The notes beneath the pieces are model-generated. The model was not told the DNA's origin and did not search any database. It saw nothing but the letters and a program-made list of their open reading frames with translations. 64,000 nt of DNA. Source: Monocercomonoides exilis PA203. Lineage: Eukaryota; Protista; Preaxostyla. This document shows positions 2,845 through 64,000 of the stretch, in pieces. The position numbers and the translations under genes are program-made. The stretch spans positions 310,001-374,000 of the forward strand of contig LSRY02000058.1 in the NCBI GenBank assembly GCA_001643675.2, written 5' to 3'. The number at the start of each line of letters is the position of its first letter. Within the stretch, counting starts at the first letter, position 1.

Positions 2845-4101
2845 AGAAACAGAAGCAATAGAAGATGTGTTTCTGCTGTTGTTGAATGGTCTTTGTTTGT
2901 ATTGTTCTTCACTCATGCCCTGTTGTTGATATTGTTGTTGTTGTTGTTGGCTTTGCAATTGTTGTTGAGTGGTTTGATTATTCTGTTTGTTTATGTTGCT
3001 CATATTGTTCATATTGTTCATGTTATTCATATTGTTCATGTTATTCATGCTATTCATGTTATTCTGTGTATTCTGATTGCTCTGCTGCTGTTGTTGTTGA
3101 CCCAGAAGAAGCTGACAGGCGCAGCTGTCGTCCAACTCACGCAACTTCCTCTGCATCTGCCTCACTTTCGCTGAAGAGCATTCAGATGAACGAGAAAGTG
3201 ACTGAGAAAGCTGATTGAACTGTGGAGTGTGTTTCTGTTGCATTGTAAGTTGGACAATCAGATTAGAGGAGGAAGAAGGAGAAGGAGAAGGAGAAGAGCA
3301 GTTACTTCCTGAATATTCAGTGTATTCAGCTGGGAATAAATTGGAATTGGTTTGTGGTTTAGGCATTATTTCTGGTTGATTCTGTGAAGAAGAAGAAGAA
3401 GAAGAAGTTGATGATGATGATGACAATGATGGAGACAAATGTTGCATATTCATAGACAAAGGCGCAGACAAAGGCACAGCCATCGAAAGCTGAGCGCTTC
3501 TTGCGAGAAACTTGGAGTGGCGAGGAAGAGGCATGCGCTTTTTAACCAGAGAAATTGAAGGATAAAGCAAAAAGTGGGTCAGAAGGGAAGAAGCAGGCGA
3601 AGAATAGCAGAAAACAAGAGGGTTGTGTGTGGTGGTGATGGGGTGATTTGAGCGAAGAGGAGAAATAGAGCGAACTTGAGGATAAAGAACGGGTTGGTTG
3701 GGAGGAAGAGATTTGTAGAGAGAAGAAGGAGAAAGAGAAGAAGAAGAAGAAGGAGAAGAAGAAGATGATGATGTTGATGATGACGATGAAGTGTTCCAAT
3801 CCAAAGAAGAAGAGGAAGAGGAAGAGGAAGAAGAAGATGTTTGTGGCGAAATGGGTAAGGTAATGTTGTGATGTGCTGTGTGTGTGTTTTTGAATGACGA
3901 GGAGATGACAACAGGAGAAAGCTGTGAAGAGAATGAAGGCAGAGTGAATGAGGAAGACTGAAGAGGCTGAATCTGTTGCTGTTGCTGTTGTTGTTGCTGC
4001 TGTTGCTGTTGTTGCCAAGATGAGAAGAGCTGAGGAGATGGCTGGGATATGTTTGGGGTGGCAAGAAGATCAATTGAAGAAGAAGAAGAATAGGAGGAGG
4101 G

Positions 4102-8759: not shown

Positions 8760-8792
<33 letters not shown>

Positions 8793-9072
8793 AGAAGAAT
8801 TAAAAGAGGAAGAAGAGGAAGAAGAAGAAGAAGATGATGATGATGACGACGAAGACGACGATGAAGGATGAGGAGGTGTAACAGAAGAAGAAAGAGGAGA
8901 AGCAGAAAGAGAAGAAGAAGAAGGAGAAGGAGAAAGGGAAGGAGAAGGAGAAGGAGAAGGAGAAGGAGAAGAAGGAGAAGAATATTCAGAATTTAGAGAA
9001 AGAGAGCGAGGGGAAAGGGAAGAAAGAGAAGAATCAGAAGAGAAGGAGAAGAAAGATAATTGAGAAGAAGAA

Positions 9073-9104
<32 letters not shown>

Positions 9105-11469: not shown

Positions 11470-11501
<32 letters not shown>

Positions 11502-36172: not shown

Positions 36173-39100
36173 TTACAAACGAACTTTTGGACCCCAAACA
36201 CTTTCAAACTCTCTCATTTCATCAGCACTGAAGTCGATGTACAGCCTGCCACCCCCCATTACCAAATCCTTAAACCCTGGAGTTGTCACGATTACTTCAA
36301 ACTCTGGTGCAGTCATCAAAAATGAAGAATATACAACAGTGCTGCATCCAACGCGTGAAGAAGAATCGATATTGGTTAAAGTTGAAGCGGTCTCAGAGTC
36401 AAACACAGGAAACGTTACTCTGTTGGAGTCCAAGAAATCCGATTCCCTAATATTCTGTTCCTTTTGCACATTTGTTTGATTTTGATTCATAGTGCCACTT
36501 CCAAAGCGAGCAGCAAATGTTTGGAAGTAATGAGTGTGAAACATACTAATTGGAGGGAGGGCTGTAAACTGGAATCGCACCGATGCTGCTGGATTGATAA
36601 CTTCTGAAAGACGAGGCCGCTGGAGTGACAGCTTTAGAATTGGGTACTGCGTCAAATTCGGAGGAAGCAATGGTATATTTGGCAGTTCTGAGAAACACCC
36701 ATTCACAAAATCCCAAGCGCATCCATACATTTTTATCCCCGTGATTAAAAAGCCATCACTTGGAATTTTTGATTGTGGAATTCGTTCTTTTGGATTGTGA
36801 GCCACAAATGAAAGTGAGAGAAGGCTTATATCATCGGCCTCTATGAAGCTATGCGAAATAGACCTGCTCATTTCTGTTCGCAGGCAGACAACAAGAGCTT
36901 TTGGAGCAAAAAACAGGTTGAGAGGAATTACTGGCTGTCTCTTTTTCAACCAGGAGATTGCGAAGCTACTGCCCATTCGAAGCCAAGCAGCAGTTTCTGT
37001 GTTTGAAACAGGCAAGTAGCGCGGAAGTGAAGCGTTCATAAGAAGCGAAGCAGTCAATTTTCCCATTGAAACTATTCCGAATGGATTTGAATGATTGGAA
37101 AAATGATTTGTTTGCTTTGTGAGAAACAGCGACTGTGCACAAGAACGAGATTGGATTGAGGAGACAACACGAAGCATGCAATAAAGCTCACCAAACATGC
37201 ACCGATCTACAGAGGAGCGAAACATGGAAGATGATGTGCCGAAGTTAGCAATGGCTCTCCTCATAACTGGAATACTTGGCAAAGCAGTGATAAGCTGCCA
37301 TTCGTTGTTGAACCAATCACGGATGCTTGCAAACAGTGGGACATCTTTTGAGTTCTGATGAGCAACTGTTGTGAGGCAACGCATCGTCAACAGAGAGCTC
37401 TCAGCAATTGCTTTGTTGGCGATTGTAGGCGACTGGATGAATGCGGTCAGCTGGGTTGCATGCTTCATTAATGACAGAACTCGGGACAATGCATGCTTTC
37501 TATCAAAAGTGGAATAAGCCATCTGACTGTCCAACACAAACGATGGTGCTTCTCCTCTGTAAAATGTGAAATTCGGAGATGCTTCTTCAAGTATATCCAC
37601 AACTGGAGAACCAATCAGAGGAGAGGAGGACGCCGAAGAAGAAGGAGAAGATGCAGGAGTTGAAGAAGCGGAAGTTGAAGAAGAAGAAGAAGAGCGATAA
37701 TTCAACAGAGCAGAAGTTGATTGTTGCAGTCTTTCTTGGTATCTGAAAACAGCGTCTCTAACAAATGGGAAATCAAAGAAATCAAAATCAGGCTGGAATA
37801 TCCGAGGAGAGAAGTAGTGCTTGAGGAGATGCATGATATATTGAATATCGTCTGAGTTGATTCCGAACCTGGAGACAAGATGAATGAACAGAGAGACTAT
37901 CAGCCAAGAAAAGTCAATATCAAGCGAAGGCATCACAGAAGCACCGTTGCTCGAGATCCAGCTATTAACAACTTCTCTCATTATTGAAAGTAGCTTAAGA
38001 AATCCAACTTGATTATACAGCTGCTGTCCGAGAATAATTGCTCTGACCCGCAAAAAGGAATAAATAAATACCAAAGAGAAAAGAAGAGTGCCCCAGCGAG
38101 GAAAGAGCGGATGATGGGCATGCTCTGCTGGGATCCACGAGATAACTGTTGCAAGGCAAAGCGGATAAGACACGATATTGTGGCAGTCAAGAATGAGAAG
38201 CGGAACCATGAAAGACGGGTTGTACGCGAGCGGCTGTGTGAGAGACTGGGAAACGAGCACAAACCTAGTGGCAGAATCACTGCGCTGAGGAAGAATAGGC
38301 TGTAAATAGCGCTCTTCTGAAGAAAGATACAAAGTGGAAAGAGCACCAGTTGAAGAAGAAGTTGAAGAAGAATTAGAAGAAGAAGATGAAGAAGATAATT
38401 TTGAGCTTGCCTTTGAATCACCAGAAAACGAAGAAGATGAAGAAGTTGTGGTAGAAGAAGAAGATGCTGCGCTTCCTGTCTGTTTTGTCCTTTTGTCTTT
38501 GAGATGTTGAGGAAACACACCAGAAACCATTGATGTTCTATCAGGAATCCCGTAGATGAAGAACTTCCAGTGCAATAATTCTGCTTTCGAGATGATTGGC
38601 TGAATAACAACAAATTCGCCTTGAAGAAATTTCTGTTGTGTCTGATTCTTCTGCAATAACGATGATTGCTTTGAATTCAACTGCAGATAAGATCCTCCGT
38701 CAGTTGTTGTACTTGTCAAAGATTCAGCCGAGCTGTCTTTTCCCTGATGAGTTATAAGCAGCGATGCAATTGTGGACAGCCTCCAGTTCGTCTCTGTCTG
38801 ACGGGTGTGCTTTGCTTGAGCCTGAAGATGCGAGTTGTCACTTGGTGTCTGCGCATTTGCAATCCATTCACTGTCTAAGTAAAAGTTTATAAACGACATA
38901 AATTTGGGATCTGCAGTTATCAGAATTGGTGAAGCAAGTGCAGATGGGCGATTTGAAGGCATTGATAGGAATGCATCAAAAGCAAATGGGAATAGAGGTG
39001 AATACGGAGAGACATGTGCTTTATGATAATACGATCTTTCAGTCGAAGCCAGAACAAAACCTTTTTTCCCATCCTTTCGCGCATTCGGAAAAGAGAACAA

Positions 39101-42100
39101 AACTTGTCCAGGAGGCAGAGAGTCCACATCTCTAACAAAGCGCCTATAACTGCCTCCAATCGGCTTTTCGTCTGAAGAAGAATTAACCGTATCTGATCCT
39201 AGGCAAGTCTTGTTTTTCACAGGGTAGATTGAAAAGTTGCCAATTGGCATAATATTTAATGAAGAAAGTGCCTCAAGGATATTTGGCTTCTCTCCTTGTT
39301 TCATTAAAGGAAGAGTCAAAAAGATAAGCTGATTTGAGTTATAGCAGGGAACAGCGTCTGGCTGCATGCTGTTCTTTATTCTCTCGCTGTGAGAAGAGAC
39401 AGCGATGCTTATGTCTGTAACCATATCTGCACAGGATGCGAGAGATCGTTCTCTTATCACCTGAACAGGAATGTTAAACAGAAGCGTGTGCTCACGATGG
39501 ATGGAAGAGGCAGACATGTCAAAACGGTGCGGCATGATCGAATCAATTCGTTTGCTGTTGAAGGATCCATTTTTCGTGAAGTCAAGCGACTTTCTACGCG
39601 CTTGCAACGGAAAAGAAGATTCTGAATCTGCTTCGAGTTGAGGATGCGATCTTCTGTTTGAATCAGACTGCGAGAAAGCGATAAAGCTGAGCATGTCACT
39701 AACATTCATGGCAGAATACAAAAATGTTACACAGTTTGGCGATGTAGTCTTGGCTGAAATTGCAATTTGCGTGTCTACCATATCGATCGATGGCACAACA
39801 AAGCCAAGCATCCCCGCTTTGAACGCTTCTAATGCATATGCCAAACGATGCGGAGCGAGATATGCAATGATCAGGAGGCGCTGGAATGAAGTTAAGTGTT
39901 CATCGAGTCTGTCTGGGAATGGTTGGCTATCAGGCGATAGAGACACAATCCATTTTATCCATTCTTTTGGATGTGAAGCAAAGGATTCCAACAAACGAGG
40001 CGATGATTGCGAAGAATAAAAAGAATTTGGATGTAACGAAGTTGAATTTGAAGAATGCAACTGAAACTCTCCTAATGAAAGATAGTTGTAATTGCCACCA
40101 GAAGATGTTTGCCTCTGATCGCCTTCGTTATTTCTATATGGATGTTCTTTTCCTCGTAAAAGATAATCGAGCGTTTTGATTGAATTACCAATGTATGAAT
40201 CTTTGATGATTGGAAAATCTTCCTCCACTTTTGCCAATAGCAAAGACTCGCTGCATTCTTTTGGGAAATGAAAAACGGGTGTTGATAAAAACACTTTCAG
40301 CCACTTTTCGTAAAATTCGTTGTCAGCAAACAAACTGAAATCTTTGCGTATAGGCTTCGGAATGCACTGAGCTCTGCGCCTCTTTGCTGAAAAAGTTGTC
40401 GGTTTCCACATTTTTCTTTCTCTTCGCTTTCTTTCTTTTGTCTCCGGGAATGTTGCTGTCATTTCATTTATGCTGTTTCTAAGAAGCGCAAATAAAGGCA
40501 GAATATTTGACAGATAATGGTCAGCTTGCTTTTTGGAAGTATCAGTGTACCCAACGTTGATTGAATGCAGCACACGATCCAGAAACTGTGAGGCAACTTG
40601 CCGAAGAAGAATTGAAAGCTGCTTTTTGTAAACTGAGGCTGAAGCAGCAGCAGAAGAAGAAGAACTTGAATGCTTTTTGGAATCAGAAGATAATTTTCCA
40701 AGAAGGCCTAATCGCTCAATTGAAAGAATAAACGGCTGATCGAATCCTTGTTTAAAAGTCCACAAGATTGAATTATCGCCAATTTTCTCATATTTTTCTT
40801 TTTCATCGATTTGAGGCGTCACAAGCTCGCCTGTCGCTGCCAATGCACCTGCCACAAGATGTCTGTGCTTTTCTGTGGAGCGTCTCATTGTGTCCATAAC
40901 AAGTCTGATTGAATCCAAAAGAAGAGTGAAGAACTGGATGTTGGAAGGAATGGAATATGTGAAATAGATATATGAGATTATTGAAACAATCGAAACATGA
41001 TGGAGATCATCCAGATTGTTTGTGTTAATGCATGTGATTACCGCTTCGTGAACATTCATCACAAATTGTGCAATGCTGTCGAGGCACAGAATCTCTCTTT
41101 CTGCTTTGACGAGATTGTTTTCTTCTGCTATGATTACGTTCAACGTTGATGTTGCCTTCATTGTTACACTGCTGCATACGCTGAAGAAGTTTCCACTTGG
41201 ATTTGTTCTCAGCTGCATCAAAAGGTCAATAAATTCTTTCACGTTTTCGTTCAAGCGACGCGACAGCGCACAGCATGTACTCAGAATCTCTCGCCGCTTC
41301 TCAACAAGCTCAGGAATAATTGTAGGCGCAAGAAAATGATAGATCAAATTTGGCTTGAAGGCTGACTCCTTGTTTCTGAATGGGCACCAGTTGATGATGA
41401 TGCAATTACAATACAATACTGTATCAGCAAGTGAACTGTAATATCTCGGAATGAATGTGATCTCATCTTGAATAAACAGAATGAGCCGGAAACCAGGGTG
41501 CACATCAAGTTCTCTACCTGCAAACGTTACTGGCTGAACAGGAGCAGAGAATGAGCATATTGCAAGTGTGTCCAGCAGTTGGAAGAGAGATTCATAGTGT
41601 TCTCGTTGCAGACTCAACTGCAAATCTGTGTACTCCACAAGCAACGGATAGCCTCTGAGCATTGCCAAAAGAGCATCCTCAGGAAATGCATTGTGGAGGA
41701 TGTTAGTGGTGACTACTGGAGTCACAGCACGGAATCGTCTTGTCACCCATTGAAGTGCTGTGCCAAGCGGATCAATGAAAACTAGCGGCTTTGTAGAAGG
41801 TATCCGAAAGGCTGCAGCTGCGCACATCAGAGATTGCTCGTCCGGGGGGACACCTTCTGTGAGATGGCGCAAACATTGAGTGGGACCATTCAATGTTGCC
41901 CAGATTGGGCGAAGGATTGGCCGGATCATGTGGGTGTAGTGCTTAACAGGTGAAGCCAGAAATGGAATTGTTCCGTCATCCAGAATATCCAACCCACCAC
42001 ACAAATCAGAGTCGCTGAAAGATGTTCGCATCAGCTTTGAAAAGGATGGAGGCTCATCTTGCTCGTTTGAATATTTTCTTTTTTTGCATTTTTTCTTTTC

Positions 42101-45100
42101 TGTTATTTGATAAAAGTAATCCTCATCCACTTCTTCAAATTCGCTATTTGGCTGGTCACTTGCATATCGATCTCCACTCCATTCATCTTCTGTTGAAAGA
42201 TCCGAGTTTGTGCTGCTCGAATCGTCATCTTCACTTTCATCAATCTCATTTTGTCCACTTCCCTTTCCAAAAGATTGCCGTCGTCTTTCATAACTTCCCT
42301 GAGCAAATTCCTCATTTCTTGTTTTGTTGTTAAATGTGAGTGTGCTAAGACGAGGGACATCAGGAGCAAGTGTTGTGAACGAAGAATTGAAAGAGACATG
42401 TGGTTGCTGAGGTTCAAAGCCTTGTATCTTTGATTTTTTATCTGAACTATAAAATTCATCATTGTCCAGTGCGATATCAGATGCACACTCCTTTTGATTA
42501 TTTTTGTTCTCTCTTTTTTGAGGTTTCCAAGATGCCTTCTGAAGCATTGCAACCAACTTGTTTCTTTGAGCACGGGGAGATGATTCTGTTGAGCTATCTG
42601 TTGAATCCGAGTCGTATGAAAAAGGCATATTCGAAGTCTTCCATGAAGAAGCAGAAGTTGAGCGTGGAGTCATCAGGGATTCTCTGCTACTTGCACTTTT
42701 TCTTCTCAACTCATGCAAATCCATTCCCATAAAGCTCGTGTCAAAGTACGATCCATCCTTCGCATAGGCTATTTCAGCTTCTTCGAGTATCAAACTCCAT
42801 CGTCTAACCATCGTCTCCCATTCATCAACATGCAGAAAGCCGTTGAATGCCAGAAACGCTGCAGCAAGCATTGAATCTCCACGGCATGTCCTCATCGCCC
42901 TTTCTACAGCAAGCGTCTTCTCTCTCCAGTGGGCAATTGTGTGGGTTATCTGCTTACTCTCGTTCTGCAGCTCAATTGCTTGACTCACCCTGCCATCGAA
43001 TCTGAAATCATCGTCATCGATTTTGGATCGTGTTACGTTTGTTCGAATTCCAGTGAGTTTGGTGACAGCTTGCAATGCAGCACTCAGACGCTGCTGAAGC
43101 TCGTCAAGATCAGACAAGTAGGAGCGAAGTATTCTCAGCTCTGTTTTATACTCTGATGCATGCTGTTGAAGTCTGAGAAACTTTGGTTTTGTTCCTTTGT
43201 TGACAGAGTGGTATGCAAGGAGTGCATCGATAAAATGGAAAATCCCTACAAGCTCACCACACACCTTCTCAATTTCATCTTCTCTGTATCGCTCTGCTGA
43301 CACATACGGTTCAAGAAGCTCCGCCTGCTCTTCGGTCAGTGTGTCCAGAGGGTACTCCATAAGCTGCTTGATGAATGTCATGTCCTGAATGAGCACAATC
43401 GAGTGGCGATAGCTGTCTGCAATCTGATTGTCGATTGGGTCGATGGTAACCTCATTCATCTTCCTTCTCAACACAATCAGAACCATATCGAACACCCGCT
43501 TTAAAAACACAGGAGGGTTTGGCAGTTTACGGAGCCATGCAAGATGAGCTGGTTGCACTTTATTTAGAGATTCATTTGCGTGTATAAGAGCCGGTCTTGC
43601 ATTCATAAGTTCCTCCTCCACCACAGCACGTTCTGCTTTCACCTTTGCAGCAATCTCATTCACAACTTTCTGCTGTTCAACCACTTTTCGTGCAAGTCCG
43701 GTGAGTTCAATGGAGATTTCAGAGATGGAAGCCATGAGCGGTGGCAGAATCTCCGACAGTCCTGTTTTCGAAGACATTAATTCTCGAATGTGGAGCCTTT
43801 GCCCAACAATATGAACATGAATTTGTGTCAACTTTGAGATTTGATTCTGCAAAGTGAGCAAGGCAAAACGAAGTGCTTTCACACGCCTATCATAAATATC
43901 AGTTGCTGAATGCACAAGCGAAATAAAGAAAGCAGGAATTCCATAAGAAGCATGCAGCAGCACAGATGAGATGCTCTTTGAACGATCTGCAAAGTATGAT
44001 GCAGTCTCTCTCACACTCGCGTACATTGCTGAGAAGCAGAGATAGAAACGCTCCATTTCAGTCCGTTTAATCTCTCGAAGCAGTTGCACTGGACCAGGAA
44101 TCACAGAGTGCTTTGAAATAGCAAAGGGAGGACTTTCAAAGCAGGTCACAATATCATTTGGATCAGTGGAACGTGTTGAGTGCAGGTAGAATATCCAAAG
44201 TTCTTCTCTCTCTTCTTTCATTGTTGCTTCATTCACATTATTCACCATCTGTGAAGCTGTTCTCTTTTGCCTCACAAACTTCCCATTTGTAAAAATGATT
44301 GAAGGCTGCTTCAAAGCGAACTTGTTGAACTGTTCTAAAACATAGGCATTTGCTTCTCTCTTCCAATATGATGCTCCATAATGACCGGATTCCACTTTCC
44401 TCGCAGAACGGAGAGGCCGAACAATTCCTCTGCCTTGAGAGCTAAATGCACGAAGACTCGAACCTCCATAACGTTTCGAGTCGACTTTGCTTTTGATATT
44501 TCCATCCAGCCAGTATAAATTCCCCTTTATTATCATTCCTTTTGCTCTTGCTCTTCTTCTTCTTCTTCTCTTTTTCCCATTCTCATTTTCTTCTTCTCCA
44601 GATGCATCTTGTTTACTGTCAGATTCTCCATCATCTTCCCGCGCTGCTGTTCTCTGAATACCAATTGGAGAGCCATAAATTGGCTGAGCCAACGAAGATG
44701 GAGGTGGATAGCCAAATCTCGAGTGCAGGCCAAGCTTTGAAGGAGGAGGAATACCAGGAGGAAGCCACCTGAGATTGTATCCCCCGTTCAATCTGAGCTT
44801 TTCGGATTCTTTTCTCCGCTGACTTTCTTTAAAAGTGACAATTGTTCTCGCCCAATCAGGAAGCTTATCTTTCTTTTTCTGGGAATTAAGTTCGAATGGC
44901 GATCTTGGAACTGGCGACAAAGATGATCCCCTCCGAACATTCTCAGAAGACAATGATTCTTGTGTCACATATGATGATGAAGGGGAAGTTTCTGTTGGAG
45001 TAAGTGAGGGTAAGATGACTTTTCTTGTTGATCTCTGCGGAGTGCTAAGGGCTTGCGAATCGTTTGACAAGTCTTTTGTTTCTGATGAAGTCACCGTTGA

Positions 45101-48100
45101 AGAAGGAGTTACAGTCTGAGCTTTTGCTCGCATGGCAGAAGATGGACGAGGGCGAGAAGGAGAAACAGATGAAAACATAACAGAAGAAGAAGACGGAAAA
45201 GAACGGCTTTGAGCTTTACTAGAAGTTTTAATAAGACTGTTTGAGCCAACATTTGTATCACCACTTGACTGAGTCACTTGTTTGGCTTGTTGCTGTTGCT
45301 GTGAATGAGACAAAGCTGGCATTGCAGTTGCTTTTGAATTGTTCATCCGAACAGGCAAACTGAATGGAGAAAGAGAAGAAAATGTCGGAGCTGTTCTTTT
45401 GGCAGTTGGAGTCTTCACTGACGAATTTGATGAGAAAGGCGTAATAGGAACAGTCTGCTGCTCTGAAAGGCTTGCTATTTCTCCTGGAATTAAAGGTGTT
45501 CTCGGAGTTTCAGCTAAAATCGAATCTGAAAGCGAAAAATCGCTTGAAAACCTTCCATTTCGTTGGCCAGGTAATGGAATCAGTTCAATTTTGGTGTAAG
45601 GAGACCATCTGATTGGGAACGGCACGAGTCTCAGAGGAGGTGGTGGAGTGAATGTTGGGACAGCATTGCTGAAATGCGGTTGTGGCGGAAGGATTGACAG
45701 TGCAGGCTTCTTCAGCAAACGATTGGCATTTCCCAGAGCATTGAACGACTGCGGAGAAGAAACTGTGAAAATAGAAGAGACTTGAGAGCGAACAGAAGAC
45801 GCTGATGCCAACGAGTCCATATCTGACCACAAAGGCGGGCTGAGCGATGGAGTTACCAGTTTCACCTGAGAGGAACGGCGGAGGGGGTCTTTTTCATCGC
45901 GGAGTGGGTTCGGAGGGAGCACATAAAAGAGGGGATGCACCATATTCTTGCCTGTTATGCGCCGTCGAAGAGCTGCATGCTGTGCAGAAGACTCGAGAGA
46001 CGCAAGCGCCTTGTCAATAGCTTTGTCATCGATATTTGATTCAAGAACATCTTCAACAGTTTCCTCACACTCGATTGTTGCTAAAGCAGATGCAATTGTA
46101 CCAAATGATGCATTTGAGGGCAAAGAAGATGGTGACAAAAGTGGAAGTTGCTTTGATGGTGCAATAAGAGAGTGCGCTTTGCGGATCAGTTCTTCTGTCT
46201 CGTCGCGAGTCATCGTTGTTGGCATAATCATCCTCTGTGCAGCTTCAACATATAGTTCAACAGGAAACACATCCAGAAACGCAAACATGCAGCATTGACA
46301 AACCCAATCAAACAGATCAGCTCCAGGATAGCTGATTGTGAAGGCTGACTTGTCCAGAATCAGTGGATCTGGCAGGGATTCTCCATCTGCCCAGTCTGAC
46401 TGCGATGCTCCAGAAGGAGATTGAATGATTGAATGAGAATTATGCACGGAGTCAGGATATATTGAACTTCGAACGGACATTCTATCTGCCTCTTCTTCCA
46501 CAACATGCAGATCAGACATTTCTGACTTATCAAACAAATCATCATTGCTTTCCGCATCCACAACTTCATCTATTTCATCTATTTCATCTATAGACAGATC
46601 TTCATCTTCAGCCTCTCCATCAAATTGCTTCTTTCCCATTTCGTCATCCTCTTCTTCCTCTTCTTCTTCCTCCTCTTCTTCATCTTCATCTTCATCTTCC
46701 TCATCTTCCTCCTCACTCTCTTCCTCGCTTTCTTTTTCATTATCAGCTTTTGAACTTTCTTCTCTCTGGCCTCTTTCTTTGTTCAAAGATTCTTGCACTT
46801 TTGAAGTATCATGAGAATTGAATTTTCCATCTTTATTTTGTTCGCTTCCTTCATTTTGACTTGTCTTTTTTGAATCTTCAAGTCCCTTACCATTTGTCAC
46901 CCCTGCTGCCTCATGTTCATTCTCACTTTCTTCTTTTCTTTCCTTTATTGTACCTCCTTCACTTACCAATGTTTGTGTGCCATTCAGCAAGAACGGGTTT
47001 CTCAGTGATTCAACATAAGGCGATGATGGAACCAGTGACCCAACATTGTGCAAAGGGTTGTGCTGGCTTGCACTCCCATCTTTTCCTAATGCTTTCTCAG
47101 CTGCTTCTCTCTGTTCTCTCACAAACTGCATGCTTTTTGTCCAGTCCAGCGGAGAAAGCGCATATGTGTTCACATTTGTGTGCTTTTTCAATGAAGGAGG
47201 GAGGATGGGCAACGGAGAGACACGGCCCTGGTTAAAGGAGGACTTTGTGAGTCTGCGTTGATTCAATGCCATCGTGTGGAGTCTTGAGCTGAGCTGGTGG
47301 ACGGCTTTTGTGTGGCTTCTTATCTTCCTTAAATGGATGCGGTCGACAACAGGCAAAGCATTTGAGAGTGCTTCTGTCTGCATGATAGATCTTTGTGATG
47401 GTGAAACAGACAACGAAGATGCGGAGAAAACTGGTGAAATTTGTGGATTTGTTGGGATTTCGTTATGTTCAGAATCAGCTTTGATGAAGCTGCGACCTGT
47501 TGGATAGTGCTCAACAACAAAAAAGAAGCGGAGGTTGGACGAAATCTGGTCAATCATCCACTGAGTGCTCTTCGTTTTGGCAAAGTGGCGCTGCTTCCCT
47601 TCAGCAAGCAAATGGCTAAGCTCACTCTCTGAAAATAGATAGAAGATGGATGTGTTACACTGCAGCAGGCAGTACAAGAATTCGCTCACATACTCCGCCT
47701 TCAGTTCGTTCTGAATCCCTGTCCCGCTATTGTCGATTGTCAGCAAACGGGTGTGTTCTTGTTCATCAATTACATTCGCATCGTCAATTCGACCTTCAAA
47801 AGCACTCATCAAATTCTTCAAAGGTGCTTTTTCCTTTCTCTTTTTGTCATCAGCTTTTGACTCAAGTTTGTTTGAATTATGCACTTTAGTCACAAATGAC
47901 TCGATCTTTGTGAGTCCAGTAATTTCCGCAAGAAGAACAGACACCATCACTTTCTCTCCAAACAGCGTTTTCAGCACAATTTCCCTGAGTGATTGATGAA
48001 ATGCAGAAGCTGATGTCGAGAGGCTGAGATGATAATACGCCATCCCGTTGTAGTGTGCTATTGAAGAGATGTACCGTCCGGATAGGAAATGTGGGTGAGT

Positions 48101-54100: not shown

Positions 54101-57100
54101 TCTTCCTTGTGCCTGGAAAAGTGAGTCTCCATCCACAATCGCATCAATCGCACCGGTTCCACTTGTAAGTTTGTTGACAAATTCATATTCTGGATTGGAT
54201 ACTTGCAGGATAAATCCGAGAGTGGGAGAAACAAACGGGATGATTTTTGTCATTTCTGGAAAGTTCATCAGAATCAAGTTCATCATCTGTAACGAAGACA
54301 TTTCTGAAAGCATCACCCGAAAACTCTCAGCAAGAAATAGTACAATGGCCACACTCTCTGCCACAAAGTGGAGGCGTTCGTGTTTTAATGCAGTACTTAA
54401 ATTGCGTATCTTTGAAGGAGGTATAAGTTGCATCACCTTCATGTAATAATCGGGGCTGTCATTGTCCGTTGAGTCTTGAGTTTCCGTTGATTCAGATGTG
54501 GATGATGTCTGAGTGTTCATTTCATCAGTAAGCGTATCTTTCGAATTAATATACGCAATAATTGGATTTGAGACTTCCGACTCTATCCTTGTGCAAAGAG
54601 GCAGGATTATTTCAAACATTGTTGTCTGAAGCAATGGAAGAGCAAGCGTCCCGAGTGTCGTTAAAACTGTTGAAAATTGATCAACTTTTCTTGTTGAAAC
54701 ATCTGCAAACTGTTGTGTAACATTCTCAATTCTGCGTGTAAGAAGCACAGCATTCTGGTAACCACTGATCGCCAGGTTCATTTCCAATGCTTCCGACAAA
54801 TGCATCTTCTGCAAAGTTAAGTTTCTGAATCGTGCCCTGATCATTCCAGGAAGACTCGCAGTATCTGAAGCGGTGTCCGAGGTTGCAAAAAAGTAAAAGC
54901 CTGGACGCACACTTGATGTTATGTCTTCAGTAATATGGCATCGCGGCTGCCCTTCTCGCGAGGCAACAAGCACACGATCAATCCACTGTCCAAGATCCTC
55001 CATAATTGAAGCAGGCAATTGGCTTATTCCATCAATAACTCCCCAAGTGCCTGAACCAGCAATCCCTCTGATAAAACGGAGTAGTGTTTGAGTTGGATGT
55101 GTCTCCTCTGACCCGTTAAGGACAAACAAATTGTGTCCACATAAAACAGAAAATTCTTTGATTCGATCATAAGTGAGATACGGTGAAGAACTTTTCATCA
55201 TCACAAAAAGTGATGAAGGATACTTTACAGCTGACTGTTGCGCTGCCAGAGCAGATATCATTGTATTTGATGCTTTGGGAAGATCAATGCTTGAGGATCG
55301 CATGGAACTGTTCATTGAAGCATCAACTGATGAGTTTGACGAAGAATGCATTTGAGCATGAACATTTGATGCAAAATTCGTTGAAGAAGCATTCTTAAAA
55401 TTTTGTATTGTTGTTTCTCTTCTTTCACCGTGTGAAAATGAAGACATAAGATTTGGAATCATAGCACTTGAAGACTGGATCTGGAACAGTGAACCATGAG
55501 AATAAGATCCTCTTGGAGGAAGAACAGAAGTAATTGATTCACAGAGCGAATGGCGAAATTCAGAGATGTTCACAAAATGGAGCGAACGGTCGTTAAGATC
55601 GCCAATCGACGTGAAGAATGGGTGAGGGCTGGAATACACTGAATGCCAAGATGCGATGGTTGATGCAGCTAGGCCAAGATAGTCGCATCCATATGGAATG
55701 CTGTCTCTTCCCACAAATAGCTGAAGACCTGCCATCGAATCAACTGGAATAACATCAGCTCTCTTCTGATGTGATGCGTTGATGCTCTTTAATAGCGAAG
55801 ATAACTCATGTTGTGGATCTGAAAATGGATAGCCATCCAACTCTGTAATATGATCATACAGTGACTGAACAGCATTCGCAGTTGCAAGTGTTTTAGGAAT
55901 CACAAACAACGGGAAAGTCAGTGAATTCATAGAAAGAAAAGTGAGATTTCTGTTCTCGTTAAGAAGCTGGTGAATAACATCAATAATGTTTATGATAGCT
56001 GTAACTGCATGCTCCACTTTCAGCCTCATAAGGGCAGAAAGAGGTTCCAATAGAACGGTCTGAAGGGATCTTAAAGCAAAGCGCACTCTCTCAACAAGTT
56101 GTTGAACAGCCTGAAACAGAATCTTCTTTTGTTTCTGCCTTTCGTGTTCTCTGTCAAGTTTTTCCTCTTTAAGCTTGGCATCAGAAACACTGTTTTGCCT
56201 TGTCATTGACTTTGATTTTTCTTTTTCAGATGTCAAGGCCAGCTCTTCCTCTTCAACTTCCTCCATTTGCAGTTGAGCAATTGCTTGTGCAAGACGCTGC
56301 GCATGATAGGAGAAAGTCGCAAGAAATGTGAAAAATACACCCTGTGCAATGGTTGTGCGTATGAAAGTGCTGAATCGAGCAGGCCTACTGTAGAACCTGT
56401 TTCTTGTCGAGCTAACTTCAATTTCAAAGAGCTCATCCATCAGATTCCGTTGAAGAATCGTTATTGGCACGCGCATGAAATCTTTAGTGCGTGAGTGAGC
56501 TGTGTCAGATGATGAAAAAGAAGGTTGAGAAGATCCTACTGAAGATACCTTTTGCGTTGGTTTAGCAACAGACTTCTCTTTCGTTGTCTCCATCTGATCC
56601 GCTTTCTTTGCTGCTAAAAGCTCAATACGTCGCTTTGATGTAACTTTGCGGTGGTAAATCATTCTGTCAAATTTGATTACTGCTTCTGTCAGCAGAAATT
56701 GGATGCTTTCCTGGATAGAAGCCTCAAGATCTCTGTAGAACTGGACTGGATCCGCGCTGGGAACGAAAGGGACAGCTGTGATAAGAGGAATGTTCTCTTC
56801 AAGTGGCCCTACAACATCTGTGACGTAAACTGTAATGGCTTTTGATGGTGTATCGTTGAAGTTTTCGTTCCCTGTGTATTTCTTGTTGCGCCATTTGTCG
56901 TATTGATCATGCTTATCAGATGAGTCTGTTGAACCAGATTCATCGTCTGATAGGAGTTTGCTGTTGGAACTATCAAATGAATCTGAGACAGAATTAAGCG
57001 AATGCGAGGAGCGTGAGCGCGAACGAGAATGAGAACCGATTAATCCACTTGAGTGTCTGTTAAAATCTGATGAAGGGAAATCGGAAGACCGAACTTCACC

Positions 57101-60100
57101 ATATGGTGTGCGCATGTTCCTTCCTTTTCTCCTTTTCCTTCTCTTTTGTTGAGATTTCTTTTGCAAAGCAGTTCCGAAGTCAAAATCTTCGTCATCCTCC
57201 TCCTCTTCATCCTCGCTATCGTTCTCTTTTGCTTCAATTTCTTTGCTTTCGGCACTTTTTTCTTCTTTGTCTTCGCTTTTCATTTCTTGAAATATCTCGT
57301 TTTCGTGTATAATGCTAGTCATTTGCTCACGAATACTTTCTTTTGAGCGAGATCTTTGAGGGGAAACAGGCAATTGAACAAGTGAATGAGAAGACTTGCT
57401 TTCGGAATTATCTGACTCTTCTTCTATTTGATAATTGTCTATTCGCCTTCTGAAATCACGCTCCATTTGTCTCATTGTTGAAGAGTTCATGTCCTGCATC
57501 ATTCTTCCTCTCTTGAAATCATTCACTTCATTCAATGATGAATAGCTGTGATAAGCACGTGAGTTTTTCATGCTGTTCGACACATACAACGAATTCTTCA
57601 AAGATCCATGGCCTAAAAATGTTGTTAAATACTGAAGTTGAGAAGGGATATTCCTCTTTCTCTGTTGATGAGTCAGGAGAAGGTGCCAATGATTCACTAA
57701 CAATTTTGCCTTTTTCGCATCAGAAGCAGAATGAGGAATGACTGCACGATGCATTGCCAGAAAAGGAGGATCGATGTGAAACACATTCAGCTTGTCAAAC
57801 TCATTTTGTAAGCTGTCTGGTGATTTTTTCCTTTCATGGGTGAAAGGAGAAGTTAATCCTGCATTTCTTATATGCGTGATACTTTGCACATCTTGTGCTC
57901 TCCCGCTCAGATAGTCGTGTTGGTATCTTGGGATCATTTCGATAGAATCATCATCTCCATCTGCATCCCCGTACTGATTCATTGAATCATCTACAGGTTG
58001 TTGTGGCCTGTTAAACTGCATGGACATTCTAGTTTCTCCATCGGTTTCTATCATCGATTTTGTTCTCTGCTGAAATCTTCCATTGAACACATCTCTTCTC
58101 ATAAACCCTTTCCCTTCGCTTCCAGAACTGCCAACTTCATTGACTGCAGATTGAAATGTCAAGTGCCTGTTAACTTCTGATGCATCATCACGCATCAGTC
58201 CAATGTGTATGTTGTTCAAGTGGGCCGAGTCATATTCTGCAGAGTGTGCCGCAACAATGTTCGGATGTTGGAATGAGGCCACATCAACAATGTGAGGAAA
58301 CAATTGTAAAAGAATTGGTTTGATTTGAGAAATGTTGCTTGCAAAGGAAAAGCTGCGGATCACATCTTCTTCACTCAGCAAGAACAGACGCGGGCAGATA
58401 TCCTGTTTTTTCAGGAGAAATGGATGAAGTCTTGCTTTGCACTCAATCAGATTTCTATGTATTTGTGGGAGAGCATTGGCAACATACTCCCCCTTTGCCA
58501 ATGCTTTGATGATAATCGGGCTCTGGCGAATTCTATTCCTGAGTCTGTACCAATCCTCTTCTATCTTTGCAAATTGTCGTGCCTCTAAAGGAAGTGCTTC
58601 CTTCATTTTCTCGTTGTTGAACAAGTCCTGAAGCAGAAGAAATAGTTGCTGTGTGGTGATTAGAGTTGTGAGCTGGTCAGAAAGCGGTTGGAGAATCACA
58701 TACCAGTCCTGCAACTGCGAGATGAATGGATGCACATAGTTGCTGTATGTCAGCTGAGAAAGTGCAACAAGAGAGTTCTCAGATTCTGCAATGGCTCGCT
58801 GGCAGATTATCTCATCAATCACCAGTTTGGACTTGTGATCCACAAAGGCAAAGCGCATTCTGTTCTTCCACACATACTGGATCCGTGCCAAATCTTTGCC
58901 AATCTTGTACTCGTTGGAAATCTCCAGGAGAAGACTCATAATTTCTGCTTTCTTCGGTACAAGGTCTGCATCAATCACCATTCCCACAGTTGGAGATGCA
59001 GTTGTTTGGAGTGTTATGCTGTTCGTAATCTTTCCCAGCTGAATCCAGTGACGTCTTTTGATTTGAGAAGGTTCCATTTGCAGAAACACATCAAGATGCT
59101 CCCGTAAAGACTCCACCTCATTCAGGAATATGAGTGCTGTTTGATTGGGTAACTCTTGTGGTGGCAGGATCGACAGCTTGTATGCAAAGTCATCGAGGGT
59201 CTCTTTCTCTTCCTTTGTGCGCAATGACTCAAACGGGATCTCTCTCAGCTGCTCTGTCCATTTTTGGAACTCATTAAAGAGCACAAACAGGTCTCGCGCA
59301 TATTGAAATTTTTCCTCCAGATCGTTCAGCTGCTGCGGGTTTGTCAGTTCCATCGACAGAAGCACCTCATCGCTGTTGAGTTCTCGCAGCTTTGCTTTCT
59401 TCTCCTTCACATGGTCCAAATAACGCTGGGCAGTCTCTGCTTGCATTTCTGTGTCTCTCTCTGGATCGTTCAGCAGAGCAAGCGCAGAAGACGCACCTTC
59501 CACCAAAACTGAGAGGCCGGACACAAAGTCCTCCTGGTTGCGCAAGAGATATTCCACAAGCTGCCTCTTCTTCGTTTCCAGCGATACCAAAAATTCTGCA
59601 TGTGTCTTCTCCAAAGCGCTGTATGATTCTGTTGCTTCATTCAGAAGTGAAAGAATCTTCTCGTTGCCTTCTGGACGATATTTCACAAGCTGACTGATCT
59701 CTTCGCTCACGTCATGCAACTCCATCTGAAAATCGATTCTTCTGTCGAGAAAGCCTGAAAAAGCCATTGAAAGTCTGCGCATATCATCGATTGTTTCCGC
59801 TGAACCAGCCACGCTATGAGTCGTCTCAGTCAGCGATTCGACAATTTCCATTATCCGAAAACGAAGTTCAGCATCAAGCCGATCTGCAAAGGCAGTCCGC
59901 CACTTCGAAAGCTGGCTCAACAATTCAGGAATGACAGAGGCAAACGTCAATACAACTGAAGGGCTGACAGAGAGTGGATGAAATAAAGTGACAAGGTTAG
60001 CAATCAGTGGCTCAGGAGGCGGTTGGATGAGAACAGAACCTGATCGCGCAATTCCCTTTGAAATCTTGTCCAGTGTAAGCACATTCCGCGAAATGGCTCC

Positions 60101-63100
60101 GATGGAGCGGAAAATGCTGTCGTGTGAGACTGGTCCATATTCGCTCACAGAAGAAGTTGAAGAAGAAGAAGATGAAGGCTGCATGAATGCCATAATTGAG
60201 GAAGGCAGCGAGGATTCAGTGGACAATGGAGAATATCGATAGTTTGAGAGCTCAGAAGTTGAAGATGAGGAAACAGAGTCAACAAAGGCAGAGGTGTACG
60301 TGTTGGTTGACGAAACTGTTGTTGACTCTGATGAGACTGTTGCAATGGAAGATGTCGAGCCGCCAGAGTGTGAAAGACCACCGCCCATTCTGTTGAATTC
60401 GATTAGGCTAATTTCATCTCCTTTGCGCTTCTTCGCATCTCCTCTGAAACTAAATGGAATCTTCTTCTCAGACAGCAAATCGAGAGAATACGGTTGTGAT
60501 GCTGATGCGCTTGCTCCAAATAAACTGAATTGCTGTTGCTGCTGTCTCTGTTGCTGTTGTATCATTTGTTGAGAACGGGTGTTTTCTGTTGACTTCAACG
60601 TGGATAGTCCATACGACCGGAGGATGTGCAAAACGATGTTCAGCGACTGCTCCCACACTGTTATCTTCTTCATTCCTCTGAGCAGATACTCTCTCTCCGC
60701 TGCATAGAACTGCTTTGCCAACTCTGTCTTGTCCATCTTCGAGTGTGCCTGGTGGATATGTGTTGTGAGCGACACAACAGAAACAAACCGCATTTCACAC
60801 AAGCTGCACACATATGGCTGGTCATCCGGAACGAACTGAGGAGGGGATGTTGGATCTGGTGTTACTCGTGACTCCACCACAGCAAATGGAAGCTGCTGGT
60901 TCTTCAAAAAGAAAATAATATTCTGCTCGTGTGTCAATGCACGAACAGGCTGATGCGAGCTGACGGATGAAAACGATCTGTGGTTGAACCTGCCACCTGC
61001 ACGGAAAGAGAAGGAACCGTTTCGAGAATGCCCAAAGGACTGGCGAGAAAAAGAGGCTGATGAACTTCGTGATGTTGTCAATGAAGGAAACACAGAAAGA
61101 GAAGCCGAGCGGCGCAATGGTGTCTGCTGCCCAGGGGATTGAAAAGGCGATGGAGAAGCAGACTGAACAGGAGAGCCAAAAGCAGACGTTGCAAACGAAA
61201 ATGCACGAGTTGATGGTGCGAATCCGATTTCGGTGGTTGATTGGTCAGAAAAGAGCGAGGCGAATGTTGACTGTCTGTTTCGAGAGAAGGAAAAGTGGCG
61301 CTGGTGCGAAATCTGATGCTGTGCAATATGCTCCAACTGAACGGGTGGTGGGCTCTGTGACAACGGAGTGCTGTTTGGAGGAGAGCCAACGAAAGAGGGC
61401 TTTTCTGTTGTTTGTGTTGATGAAGCTTGTCTCATCCACTGAATAGACGATGACTGAGAGAGTGTGGGCATGGCAGGAGTTATGAGCAGCCCAGCTGAAT
61501 TGTGAAATCTTCGACTTTGCTGCTTGGAAATTGCAGACATTGCTCCTGTTCCTTCATTCAATCCTGCACTCCCATTGAATCCAGATGAATGGTGTGAATA
61601 TGAAGCACCATCGCTTCCTTCTCCCGATGTCAGAAAGCGCAGCTCGTACAGCTGTGGAACGTGAAGAGAAGGCAGATCGCGGTGATGAGTGGGTGAACGC
61701 ACCAGCCCGCTCAGCTCATCACACACTGAAACAGGATTGAACTTGAACAGAAAATCGAACATTGAAAATCGCTCGTTAAGAGCCGTAGCAAATTCTGTGA
61801 CGTTCGGCAAGGAAGCCACAACAAGCATCGTTTCCTTCAGCAAAGCATTGCTTGAAGATAGCTCATTCCAGATGTTTGGAGGCATCTCTTCAGGCTCAGC
61901 GTCATTGGCAATCTGCTCAGAATGTTCAGGATTGTCTGTATCAGCGCCCATCTCGTCATTTTGCAGAATGTTGTTGGTTGAATACTGCAGCGGAGCGAAC
62001 AGGTTTGTCTTTCCAGGAAGTGTTGTAGCTGACGAGGCATTTTCCTTTTCGGCAAGGCGGAATCCTTCCATTTCTAATGTCTCGAGTGTTGTCTCTCCAG
62101 AAATCATTGAAAATCTTCTGTTGAGCCTCACCAAATGAGGATCAGTGCTATCTTGTGCAGTCTTTGAGTCTTGTTCCTGTTCAGATGCTCTTCTTTTCTC
62201 CGACGCTGCATCGTCCATTAATGAAGTCTCTCCTGCTTCAGAGCTCATAGTCAGCATATCCAAATCCCTCAAATTGCCCAGCGAATCTGTCGACACAACA
62301 GAAGCCGACCTTTCAAAGTGGTCGAGGCGCTCCTGAAACTGCATCGGCAGCAAGTTGTCTGTGGACTCCTGCAAGAACTTGCCTGAGCTGTCTGTCTGCT
62401 TCACCGCTCTCCATCTGCTCAGCGGACGTGTGGCAGACCACATCGGCATCTTCTCCACTGCGTTGAAGATGGACGTGATGAGCGTGTTGATGGAGCTCAG
62501 AATGTTTGCTGCATTTGGCACGAACTTGAAGCGAGGCAGTGTGAACTCGGCATTCAGCACTAAAGCCACCCGCTGCTTTCGCGAAAAGAGACAAGGATAG
62601 CAGCAGCTGCTGGACTCTCCTTCAGTGTGCAGGACTTGCCCTTCGTCTTCGGAAAGACGATGTGGACTGCCAGTGAAGCTGCTGCTATTTGGCATTTGTG
62701 CATAAGATGACGTAGACTGATTGCGCAGTGGTGATTCACTGTGCCTCACAGACAGCATCGAATACAGTAGAGAAAGAGATTTCAGCACAGAATGGTGTAC
62801 TGCTTCCACAAACAGGCGGTTGTATGATTGCAACATCGATTGGAACCCCTTCCGCATGTCCTCCAGCACCTTCAATGATCCAAAAAATGCTCGGAAGGTC
62901 TGCTGTTTCTCTTTTCCCAGCTTTTCTGTTCTGTCTGTCGAATGAATTTGCTCATGAGCATTGCGCTTCTCTTTCTCCGCGCCTGGGAAAGTGAGCATCG
63001 ACTGAACAAAAGCCGGCTGCTCCTTCTGTTTTCCCTCTGACCGCTGCTCTTCTGTGCTAATCGCAAGAAACGGATCCAATGCAGCTAAAGTCGGGTCAAC

Positions 63101-64000: not shown

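What the first reader, a model, noticed from the sequence alone, without database searches (positions are those of the whole stretch)
36173..64000. Giant 'pseudo-motor' dynein heavy chain: twice normal length, ATPase motifs lost, architecture intact
Seen: more than 9,270 uninterrupted codons carrying every dynein HC landmark in order, and the N-terminus is still outside the window. Established: dynein HCs are ~4,000-4,700 aa and need AAA1 hydrolysis. Here the AAA1, AAA3 and AAA4 P-loops are unrecognisable while the linker, AAA2 P-loop, stalk/MTBD, AAA5/6 and C-terminal motifs persist. A 27.8-kb stop-free frame rules out a decayed pseudogene. Inference: a catalytically dead, microtubule-binding dynein paralogue repurposed as a structural cross-linker, brake or scaffold, conceptually like mammalian DNHD1 but apparently derived from an outer-arm chain. 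If the host is an oxymonad, the cross-bridged axostyle/preaxostyle microtubule arrays are an attractive location. This is the strongest candidate for a new system in the window.
Basis: partly seen in the sequence, partly recalled or inferred. Interest (0 to 1): 0.85.

Follow-up and report, generated by a model that had tools for sequence, protein, structure and literature searches.

The report
Giant motor-dead dynein of oxymonads
This is a real, unbroken 32-kb gene of the gut protist Monocercomonoides exilis for a 10,708-residue (1.2 MDa) dynein heavy chain that keeps the dynein build and its microtubule-binding stalk but has lost the ATP site that drives movement; it belongs to an oxymonad-only family of such dead motors that probably act as fixed microtubule struts or scaffolds.

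Summary
The minus-strand frame runs 4.3 kb beyond the window: 10,716 stop-free codons, with a likely start giving 10,708 aa.

Dynein landmarks lie in canonical order: linker, AAA1, AAA2, vestigial AAA3/4, stalk with microtubule-binding domain, AAA5, AAA6, C-terminal domain. The whole protein has one P-loop, at AAA2. In AAA1 the Walker A, the Walker B glutamate and sensor-1 are gone.

It is not a lone oddity. Three M. exilis paralogues share the dead AAA1, and up to six more giant dynein-like frames were not inspected. Blattamonas nauphoetae has a colinear orthologue and seven further members, the seven that reach AAA2 each keeping only that P-loop.

The family is monophyletic and sits beside the outer-arm gamma (DNAH5-type) clade. 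A canonical gamma chain exists separately, in two copies.

Four RNA libraries from one study hold the locus without splice joints.

Non-motile dyneins are already known (DNAHX, DNHD1), so this is a new, more extreme variant of a known kind. A static cross-linker role, for instance in the axostyle, is inference only.

The scan has already reported paralogues of this gene elsewhere in this genome.

The parts
36173..64000 (-). Part of the coding sequence inside the window (aa 1434-10708 plus the stop at 36173-36175). The first 1,433 codons lie beyond the window end, up to C56:378299.
60629..60907 (-). Family-specific block in the tail with a single C2H2 zinc-finger-like motif (aa 2496-2520). It is present in all eight Blattamonas family members and absent from the canonical heavy chains tested.
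59669..59935 (-). Weak match to the distal tail of gamma-type dynein tails. A second weak match lies at 63332-63715.
   Evidence: E 1e-6 and 1.5e-7, colinear
58259..59620 (-). Linker domain (DHC_N2).
   Evidence: 179 bits; E 9e-51
54719..55201 (-). AAA1 large-domain remnant. The Walker A position (55154-55201) holds a non-P-loop sequence. Walker B (55016-45) has Gly in place of the catalytic Glu. Sensor-1 is lost (54821-92). The Arg of the LFRP motif is kept.
50360..53161 (-). AAA2 module with large inserts. It holds the only P-loop of the protein, at 53123-53146.
   Evidence: hhalign probability 98.6%
43988..50359 (-). AAA3-AAA4 region: vestigial, no P-loop, with long serine-rich and acidic inserts. 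Only weak colinear remnants are seen (AAA3 sensor region near 49133-49174, and a W..C..V.GDRL motif before AAA4).
   Evidence: low probabilities
42746..43987 (-). Coiled-coil stalk and microtubule-binding domain. After the linker it is the best-conserved region, with a 13-residue insert in the microtubule-binding domain.
   Evidence: (E 2e-38)
41630..41896 (-). AAA5 remnant.
   Evidence: E 1.5e-4
39764..39985 (-). AAA6 remnant.
   Evidence: E 1e-10
36680..36964 (-). C-terminal domain remnant (Dynein_C, just under the Pfam cut-off).
   Evidence: 24.7 bits, cut-off 25.7
59350..62147 (.). Stretch of the gene that also exists as at least 9 decayed copies, with stop codons, on other contigs.

Best explanation
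The locus is an intact, intron-free gene that is probably transcribed. It encodes a 10,708-aa dynein heavy chain paralogue that cannot run the dynein ATPase cycle. Shown: the dynein ring architecture is kept in order. AAA1, the site that powers every known dynein, has no Walker A, no catalytic Walker B glutamate and no sensor-1. AAA3 and AAA4 have no P-loop. Only AAA2, a nucleotide-holding and non-hydrolysing site in canonical dyneins (established knowledge), keeps its P-loop. The linker and the stalk with its microtubule-binding domain are the best-preserved parts. The gene belongs to a family found so far only in oxymonads (Monocercomonoides and Blattamonas). The family probably split from the outer-arm gamma (DNAH5-type) lineage, lost AAA1 catalysis before the two genera diverged, then duplicated and swelled with low-complexity inserts. 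Inferred: the protein binds microtubules through its stalk without ATP-driven release. It would then work as a static strut, tether or scaffold, with AAA2-bound nucleotide serving ring stability. It would sit on one of the oxymonad microtubule arrays (axostyle, preaxostyle or flagellar apparatus).
For: Real gene: 0 stops in 10,716 codons against 349-569 in the other five frames. Decayed copies of a 2.8-kb piece of the same gene carry 3-5 stops in about 220 codons, an internal neutral control. The Blattamonas protein P0001 is colinear from residue 1 to about 6170. RNA-library contigs cover window 50001-56000 at 100% identity without joints in 4 runs of one study. Dead motor: one P-loop in the whole protein; AAA1 motif table; the same losses in paralogues C41, C69 and C45; only the AAA2 P-loop in each of the 7 Blattamonas members that reach AAA2. 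Microtubule binding: stalk and binding-domain HMM match E 2e-38. The AlphaFold model (pLDDT 71) hits only dyneins, with 5ayh at TM 0.77 and 8i3j at 0.73 by target. Origin: family monophyletic at 100, query plus P0001 at 99, attached beside the gamma clade. C80, the gamma/DNAH5 type, is the best canonical match in the linker (107 vs 82 bits), AAA1 (37.5 vs 27.5) and stalk (104.7 vs 51).
Against: No protein-level or localisation data exist. Microtubule binding is inferred from sequence and a medium-confidence model. RNA evidence comes from assembled contigs of one study, and no silent-stretch control for DNA carry-over could be laid. The gamma affinity rests on very divergent sequences, a quick tree and an assumed root, so long-branch artefacts are possible. 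Only about 1,190 of about 3,060 motor-profile positions could be aligned, so an unconventional nucleotide site cannot be formally excluded. The N-terminal roughly 1,500 residues match nothing.
Confidence: 0.7

Rival explanations
1. DNAHX-like regulatory partner. The dead heavy chain pairs with an active axonemal heavy chain, holds it in an inhibited (phi-like) state and helps to store or deliver flagellar dyneins. It would not cross-link cytoplasmic microtubules.
For: The only structurally studied non-motile heavy chain, DNAHX, also branched from the outer-arm DNAH5/8-type chain, carries many inserts and has a degenerate AAA1; it forms a heterodimer (PMC11785096). The family here also attaches next to the gamma clade.
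Against: DNAHX keeps its AAA1 Walker A and is locked with ATP, and an insert disables its microtubule-binding domain (PMC11785096). Here Walker A is gone and the stalk and binding domain are among the best-kept parts. No DHC_N1 dimerisation or intermediate-chain region is detectable. Ten or so paralogues of 7,000-13,800 aa are hard to explain as chaperone-like partners.
Confidence: 0.15
2. Giant disordered scaffold. The dynein core is a vestigial anchor, and the function lies in the thousands of residues of serine-rich, acidic and basic inserts, for example as a matrix or spacer around microtubule arrays.
For: Serine makes up 15% of the residues. Only about 1,190 motor positions align, and most added length is low-complexity insert. 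Inserts differ in length between the orthologues (about 6,170 vs 4,618 aa over the shared span).
Against: The inserts are poorly conserved between orthologues, while the linker, AAA1 and AAA2 cores and the stalk are conserved. This argues that the dynein core is what selection keeps.
Confidence: 0.1
3. Still an active motor that uses an unrecognised nucleotide site, for example AAA2 turned catalytic or a rebuilt AAA1 pocket.
For: The AAA2 P-loop is conserved in every family member that covers it. The arginine of the AAA1 LFRP motif is kept.
Against: No known dynein moves without AAA1 hydrolysis (established knowledge). Walker A, the Walker B glutamate and sensor-1 of AAA1 are all lost, in different ways in each paralogue, which is the pattern of relaxed constraint and not of a rebuilt site.
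Confidence: 0.04
4. Decaying pseudogene or assembly/annotation artefact.
For: No protein from this locus was found in the protein collections searched. Pieces of the gene exist as dead copies elsewhere.
Against: A stop-free frame of 32 kb, a colinear orthologue in another genus, identical RNA-library contigs, and dead copies that show what decay looks like in this genome.
Confidence: 0.01

Closest known systems
DNAHX (non-motile dynein heavy chain of sea-urchin sperm and other externally fertilising animals; PMC11785096)
   Same: A heavy-chain paralogue that arose next to the outer-arm DNAH5/8-type chain. It is longer than normal through inserts, its AAA1 motifs are degenerate and it is predicted non-motile.
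   Different: DNAHX is 5,272 aa, keeps its AAA1 Walker A and binds ATP, and its microtubule-binding domain is disrupted by an insert. It is reported only in animals. Here the protein has 10,708 aa, Walker A is absent, and the stalk and binding domain are well kept. The family does not group with the mollusc DNAHX-like sequences in the tree. An independent origin is likely.
DNHD1 (orphan dynein heavy chain of mammals, needed for sperm flagella)
   Same: A divergent heavy chain with disordered inserts and an AAA1 lacking catalytic Walker B residues, as stated in PMC11785096.
   Different: About 4,750 aa and a single gene (my own knowledge for the length). No DNHD1 sequence was compared here, so any relationship is untested. 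The DNAHX paper itself reports no sequence homology between DNHD1 and DNAHX.
Outer-arm dynein gamma heavy chain (Chlamydomonas gamma, human DNAH5/DNAH8; M. exilis C80, MONOS_5201)
   Same: It is the best canonical match in linker, AAA1 and stalk, and the family attaches beside this clade.
   Different: The canonical chain has about 4,500 aa and intact AAA1 motifs and is 52-54% identical to animal DNAH5. The dead protein shares only about 20-25% identity with it in alignable blocks and is not nested inside the clade.
Dynein-like cross-bridges of motile oxymonad axostyles (Saccinobaculus, Pyrsonympha; PMC2108841, PMC2114570)
   Same: An oxymonad-specific microtubule array whose intra-row bridges look like outer dynein arms. 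The molecules have, to my knowledge, never been identified.
   Different: Those bridges are ATP-sensitive and force-generating. This protein lacks the motor site, and no localisation links it to the axostyle.

Membership tests
Dynein heavy chain superfamily | Linker domain (DHC_N2) before the AAA ring | tested here: met
   Pfam PF08393, 179 bits against a cut-off of 31.9; HMM of 14 canonical M. exilis chains, E 9e-51.
Dynein heavy chain superfamily | Six AAA+ modules in one chain, in order | tested here: inconclusive
   AAA1 (AAA_6, 37.8 bits, above the cut-off), AAA2 (hhalign 98.6%), AAA5 and AAA6 (weak HMM hits) are colinear. AAA3 and AAA4 appear only as low-probability remnants.
Dynein heavy chain superfamily | Antiparallel coiled-coil stalk with microtubule-binding domain between AAA4 and AAA5 | tested here: met
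   Pfam MT, 30.1 bits (cut-off 24); HMM E 2e-38. The predicted fold matches dynein stalk structures 5ayh and 8i3j (TM by target 0.77 and 0.73).
Dynein heavy chain superfamily | Catalytic AAA1 site (Walker A GPAGTGKT, Walker B DE, sensor-1 N) | tested here: not met
   All three are absent in the alignment to canonical chains and PDB dyneins. The protein is therefore a structural homologue, not a functional motor by sequence.
Dynein heavy chain superfamily | N-terminal tail (DHC_N1) for dimerisation and intermediate and light chains | tested here: not met
   No PF08385 hit even at E 1. There are only two weak colinear matches to the distal part of gamma-type tails.
Dynein heavy chain superfamily | C-terminal domain (Dynein_C) | tested here: inconclusive
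   24.7 bits against a cut-off of 25.7.
Outer-arm gamma / DNAH5 class | Nested within the gamma clade in a heavy-chain tree | tested here: not met
   The family forms its own 100%-supported clade, joined to the node between the gamma clade and the rest. It is at best a sister group or derivative.
DNAHX | Groups with animal DNAHX, AAA1 Walker A kept, insert disrupting the microtubule-binding domain | tested here: not met
   It does not group with the mollusc DNAHX-like sequences (my assignment of those sequences, from their length and motifs). Walker A is absent and the binding domain is contiguous except for a 13-residue insert.
DNHD1 | Orthology to vertebrate DNHD1 | not tested
Oxymonad giant dead-dynein family (defined here) | Only the AAA2 P-loop kept, a C2H2-like block in the tail, dead AAA1 | tested here: met
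   The features are shared with the Blattamonas proteins P0001, P0003-6, P0012, P0046 and P0062 wherever those models cover the feature, and with M. exilis C41, C69 and C45 (for these three only the AAA1 region was available).

The most novel reading that the evidence does not exclude
The oxymonad giant dead dyneins are the long-unidentified inter-microtubule bridges of the axostyle and preaxostyle. An outer-arm-derived heavy chain would have been recruited to cross-link singlet microtubule sheets. In genera with a non-contractile axostyle (Monocercomonoides, Blattamonas) it lost its ATPase and became a static strut, while relatives in oxymonads with beating axostyles should still carry an active AAA1.
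Probability: 0.2. Interest if true: 0.75.

Novelty: new variant of a known kind. Interest (0 to 1): 0.6.

Why it matters
Dynein heavy chains are among the most conserved large proteins of eukaryotes. The canonical gamma chain of this organism is still 52-54% identical to animal DNAH5.

Here the same scaffold has been released from motor duty, has multiplied into a family shared by two oxymonad genera, and has grown to 7,000-13,800 residues while keeping its linker, its AAA2 nucleotide pocket and its microtubule-binding stalk. This is a natural experiment on which parts of dynein matter when it no longer moves. It is also a third, independent and more extreme case beside DNAHX and DNHD1.

The family offers concrete candidates for the dynein-like bridges of the oxymonad axostyle, described by electron microscopy in 1973-1986 and never identified. 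No protein from this locus was found in the protein collections searched, so the gene is probably missing from current gene sets.

Tried and rejected
- Pfam on the N-terminal 2,766 aa gave only sub-threshold C2H2 hits and no DHC_N1.
- An ESM Atlas feature search of residues 1-420 gave no usable hit.
- The search for homologous proteins with the C2H2 block as region gave no hit, not even the known Blattamonas members. This is a limit of the word index and says nothing.
- The search for homologous proteins with the 9,275-aa piece found no protein from the locus itself. It found only one family member plus long animal dyneins admitted by the length filter.
One genome search failed and later loci could not be cut. 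So C41, C69 and C45 were studied only around AAA1, and C14, C1, C5b, C25b, C50 and C16 not at all.
- I first read a stretch near aa 6729 as the AAA4 Walker A remnant. hhalign instead pairs it, weakly, with the AAA4 Walker B region, so no AAA4 motif assignment is claimed.
- I tested whether the family descends from the giant but P-loop-bearing paralogue C10b. This is rejected, because C80 scores higher than C10b in both the linker and AAA1.
- The M. exilis and Preaxostyla genome papers do not mention these genes. The supplement of PMC6759080 is not held.
- A claim from an earlier scan report that three oxymonads share the family could not be checked. I saw only two genera.
Full report
**Identity of the DNA.** The window is contig C56:310001-374000 of an 82.3-Mb, 101-contig genome. 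Protein names returned for hits on the same contigs identify it as Monocercomonoides exilis. The contig count matches the published long-read assembly (PMC8767320).

**The observation.** The ORF listing reports one minus-strand ORF at 36173..63994, and the frame stays open to the window edge. With the neighbouring 26 kb added, the frame continues to an in-frame stop at extended coordinate 68324-68326. That gives 10,716 stop-free codons.
- The first Met lies eight codons into the frame, giving 10,708 aa, 1.196 MDa and 15% serine.
- The N-terminus aligns residue 1 to residue 1 with a Blattamonas protein, so this start is probably right.
- The other five frames carry 349-569 stops. About 569 are expected from base composition.
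- RNA-library contigs cross 6 kb of the gene, including low-complexity inserts, without any joint. The inserts are therefore coding sequence, not introns.

**Anatomy.** Pfam finds DHC_N2 (179 bits), AAA_6 (37.8 bits, but only profile positions 49-198, which start just after the P-loop), weak AAA_5 and lid matches, MT (30.1 bits) and Dynein_C (24.7 bits, just under the cut-off), in canonical order. No DHC_N1 is found. I built a profile from 14 canonical M. exilis heavy chains, all of which are themselves stop-free over 10 kb. Its matches on the protein:

| Region | Residues | E-value |
|---|---|---|
| Linker | 2894-3347 | 9e-51 |
| AAA1 | 4381-4527 | 3e-5 |
| AAA2 | 5048-5099 | 1.6e-6 |
| Stalk and microtubule-binding domain | 8105-8518 | 2e-38 |
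| AAA5 | 8802-8890 | 1.5e-4 |
| AAA6 | 9439-9512 | 1e-10 |

- Profile-profile comparison extends AAA2 over aa 5047-5980, across large inserts, at 98.6% probability. For AAA3 and AAA4 it finds only weak, colinear traces.
- About 1,190 of 3,059 motor-profile positions could be aligned. The rest is divergent or is insert.

**The ATP sites.** A motif scan finds exactly one P-loop in 10,708 residues, GAAGSGKS at aa 5052, which is AAA2. In AAA1:
- The canonical GPAGTGKTE is replaced by an unrelated stretch.
- Walker B FDEFNR reads IDGISQ, so the catalytic Glu is a Gly.
- Sensor-1 NPGYAGR is replaced.
- The arginine of the LFRP motif remains.

All 14 canonical chains of the same genome have these motifs intact. 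In canonical dyneins AAA2 holds nucleotide without hydrolysing it (established knowledge). Its retention fits a structural nucleotide rather than an engine.

**Microtubule binding.** The stalk and binding domain align contiguously with canonical chains, including the NPP-containing helix of the binding domain, with one 13-residue insert. An AlphaFold model built on an 8-sequence alignment (mean pLDDT 71) is a long helical hairpin with a small globular tip. Every top Foldseek hit in the PDB is a dynein. The isolated stalk structures 5ayh and 8i3j match at TM 0.77 and 0.73 by target. Binding itself was not tested.

**A family, not a single gene.** Whole-genome scans with DHC_N2 and AAA_6 show about 16 canonical heavy chains with open frames of 4,185-5,320 aa. 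They also show a set of giant divergent ones:
- C56 (this gene), C41 (11,068), C45 (13,776), C69 (10,340), C14 (9,452), C1 (9,015), C5 (8,171), C25 (7,994), C16 (7,564), C50 (7,081).
- Less divergent giants: C10 (9,622), C30, C43 and C91.
- In six of the giants, this gene included, the AAA_6 match starts at profile position 49 to 66, that is, after Walker A; in a seventh, C50, the only match is sub-threshold and covers positions 111-198.
- The nearest paralogues (C41, C69, C45; 33-38% identity around AAA1) show the same loss of Walker A, Walker B and sensor-1, each with different replacement residues.

An exhaustive profile-free search of 1.8 billion representative proteins with the linker found relatives above the canonical background only in Blattamonas nauphoetae.
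- P0001 (KAK2964927.1) scores E 6e-93 at 33% identity. It is colinear with this protein from residue 1 to about 6170 and is probably a truncated model of the orthologue.
- Further Blattamonas members have 6,500-7,000 aa.
- The next hits are ordinary dyneins of unrelated protists at about 20% identity.
- Each of the seven Blattamonas members that reach AAA2 has only that P-loop.
- All eight share a block in the tail with a C2H2 zinc-finger-like motif (aa 2496-2520 here). That block is absent from the canonical chains tested and from all 284 other proteins fetched.

**Origin.** A maximum-likelihood tree (LG+C20, 1,193 columns, 33 rows, quick search) gives three results.
- The family is one clade (SH-aLRT 100).
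- This gene is sister to P0001 (99).
- The family attaches at the node between the rest of the dyneins and the clade holding M. exilis C80.

C80 is the outer-arm gamma/DNAH5 type by its PDB matches. It is present in two copies, is annotated as MONOS_5201, and is 52-54% identical to animal DNAH5. Independently of the tree, C80 is the best canonical match in three regions:

| Region | C80 (bits) | Next-best canonical (bits) |
|---|---|---|
| Linker | 107 | 82 |
| AAA1 | 37.5 | 27.5 |
| Stalk | 104.7 | 51 |

The best PDB matches to the AAA1 remnant are Chlamydomonas gamma and human DNAH5. Descent from a gamma-like outer-arm chain is thus the best reading, with the caveat of long branches and an unrooted tree. 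The orthologue pair within the oxymonads shares only 22-37% identity in alignable blocks. The family therefore evolves far faster than the canonical gamma chain, yet keeps its frame and core.

**Expression.** Four metatranscriptomic RNA runs of one study hold 92-100% of the sampled words of window 50001-56000.
- Their contigs lie on it at 100% identity, tile it nearly gap-free (one run in a single piece), and show no joints.
- Each run's contigs total about 63 Mb, less than the 82-Mb genome and shared with bacterial transcripts. Genome-wide DNA carry-over therefore seems an unlikely source, but no silent-stretch control could be laid.
- I treat transcription as likely, not proven.

**Comparison with what is known.** Non-motile dynein heavy chains are described.
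- DNAHX of sea urchin and other animals (5,272 aa) branched from the outer-arm DNAH5/8-type chain. It has inserts, a degenerate AAA1 that still binds ATP, and a disrupted microtubule-binding domain.
- DNHD1 has an AAA1 lacking Walker B residues (PMC11785096).
- The oxymonad family differs in several ways: Walker A is lost altogether, the stalk is preserved, the proteins are two to three times longer, there are many paralogues, and the family has its own zinc-finger block.
- It does not group with the mollusc sequences that look like DNAHX.
- I found no paper that mentions these oxymonad genes.
- Classic work showed that the intra-row bridges of motile oxymonad axostyles resemble outer dynein arms and are ATP-sensitive (PMC2108841, PMC2114570). 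That makes an outer-arm-derived, oxymonad-specific family an attractive but untested candidate for axostyle or preaxostyle bridges.

**Verdict.** The cellular role remains inference. The kind of thing is known, so this is a new and extreme variant. Earlier reports of this scan describe paralogues of this gene on other contigs of the same genome with the same reading. I reached mine before reading them, and I confirmed the shared dead AAA1 for three paralogues myself.

Noticed in passing
window 59350-62147; copies at L002 (C91:1270231-1273372), L003 (C68:221179-224325) and on C82, C42, C24, C51, C10, C45, C36: A 2.8-kb piece of this gene (tail-linker junction) exists as at least 9 dispersed decayed copies. 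They are 82-90% identical in DNA and carry 3-5 stop codons in about 220 codons. There is a sharp boundary at window 62147. Beyond it the copies match each other (90% over 3.1 kb) but not the gene. This looks like gene-fragment capture by a larger dispersed repeat. The public annotation-aa hypothetical proteins (MONOS_18061, MONOS_17754 and others) on these copies.
   Followed up: partly
G000:C10:186236-196235 region (locus L032/L033, paralogue 'C10b', open frame 9,622 aa): Another giant heavy chain keeps an AAA1 P-loop (GPAGVGKTE) and a Walker B reading LLDEAQSL. The motifs closely resemble those of long mollusc dyneins that look like DNAHX (GPVGVGKTE, FDEAQSL). DNAHX is reported as animal-only, so either this is convergence or the DNAHX type is older than thought.
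   Followed up: no
G000:C80:371387-372601 (+) and C80:515284-516498 (-): The canonical outer-arm gamma heavy chain is present as two identically scoring copies in inverted orientation, 144 kb apart on one contig.
   Followed up: no
whole genome: All 14 canonical dynein heavy chain loci fetched are stop-free over the full 10 kb read, so these very long genes appear intron-free in an otherwise intron-containing genome.
   Followed up: no
window 6096-12221 (-) and 19620-21002 (+): The neighbours are a 2,041-aa Pumilio-repeat RNA-binding protein, in a stretch with very strong GC and AT skew, and an FGGY-family carbohydrate kinase fragment. Neither has an evident link to the dynein gene.
   Followed up: partly
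protein collections: No protein from this locus was found in the collections searched, although the canonical gamma chain of the same genome is present (MONOS_5201). The giant gene seems to be missing from, or broken in, the public gene set.
   Followed up: partly
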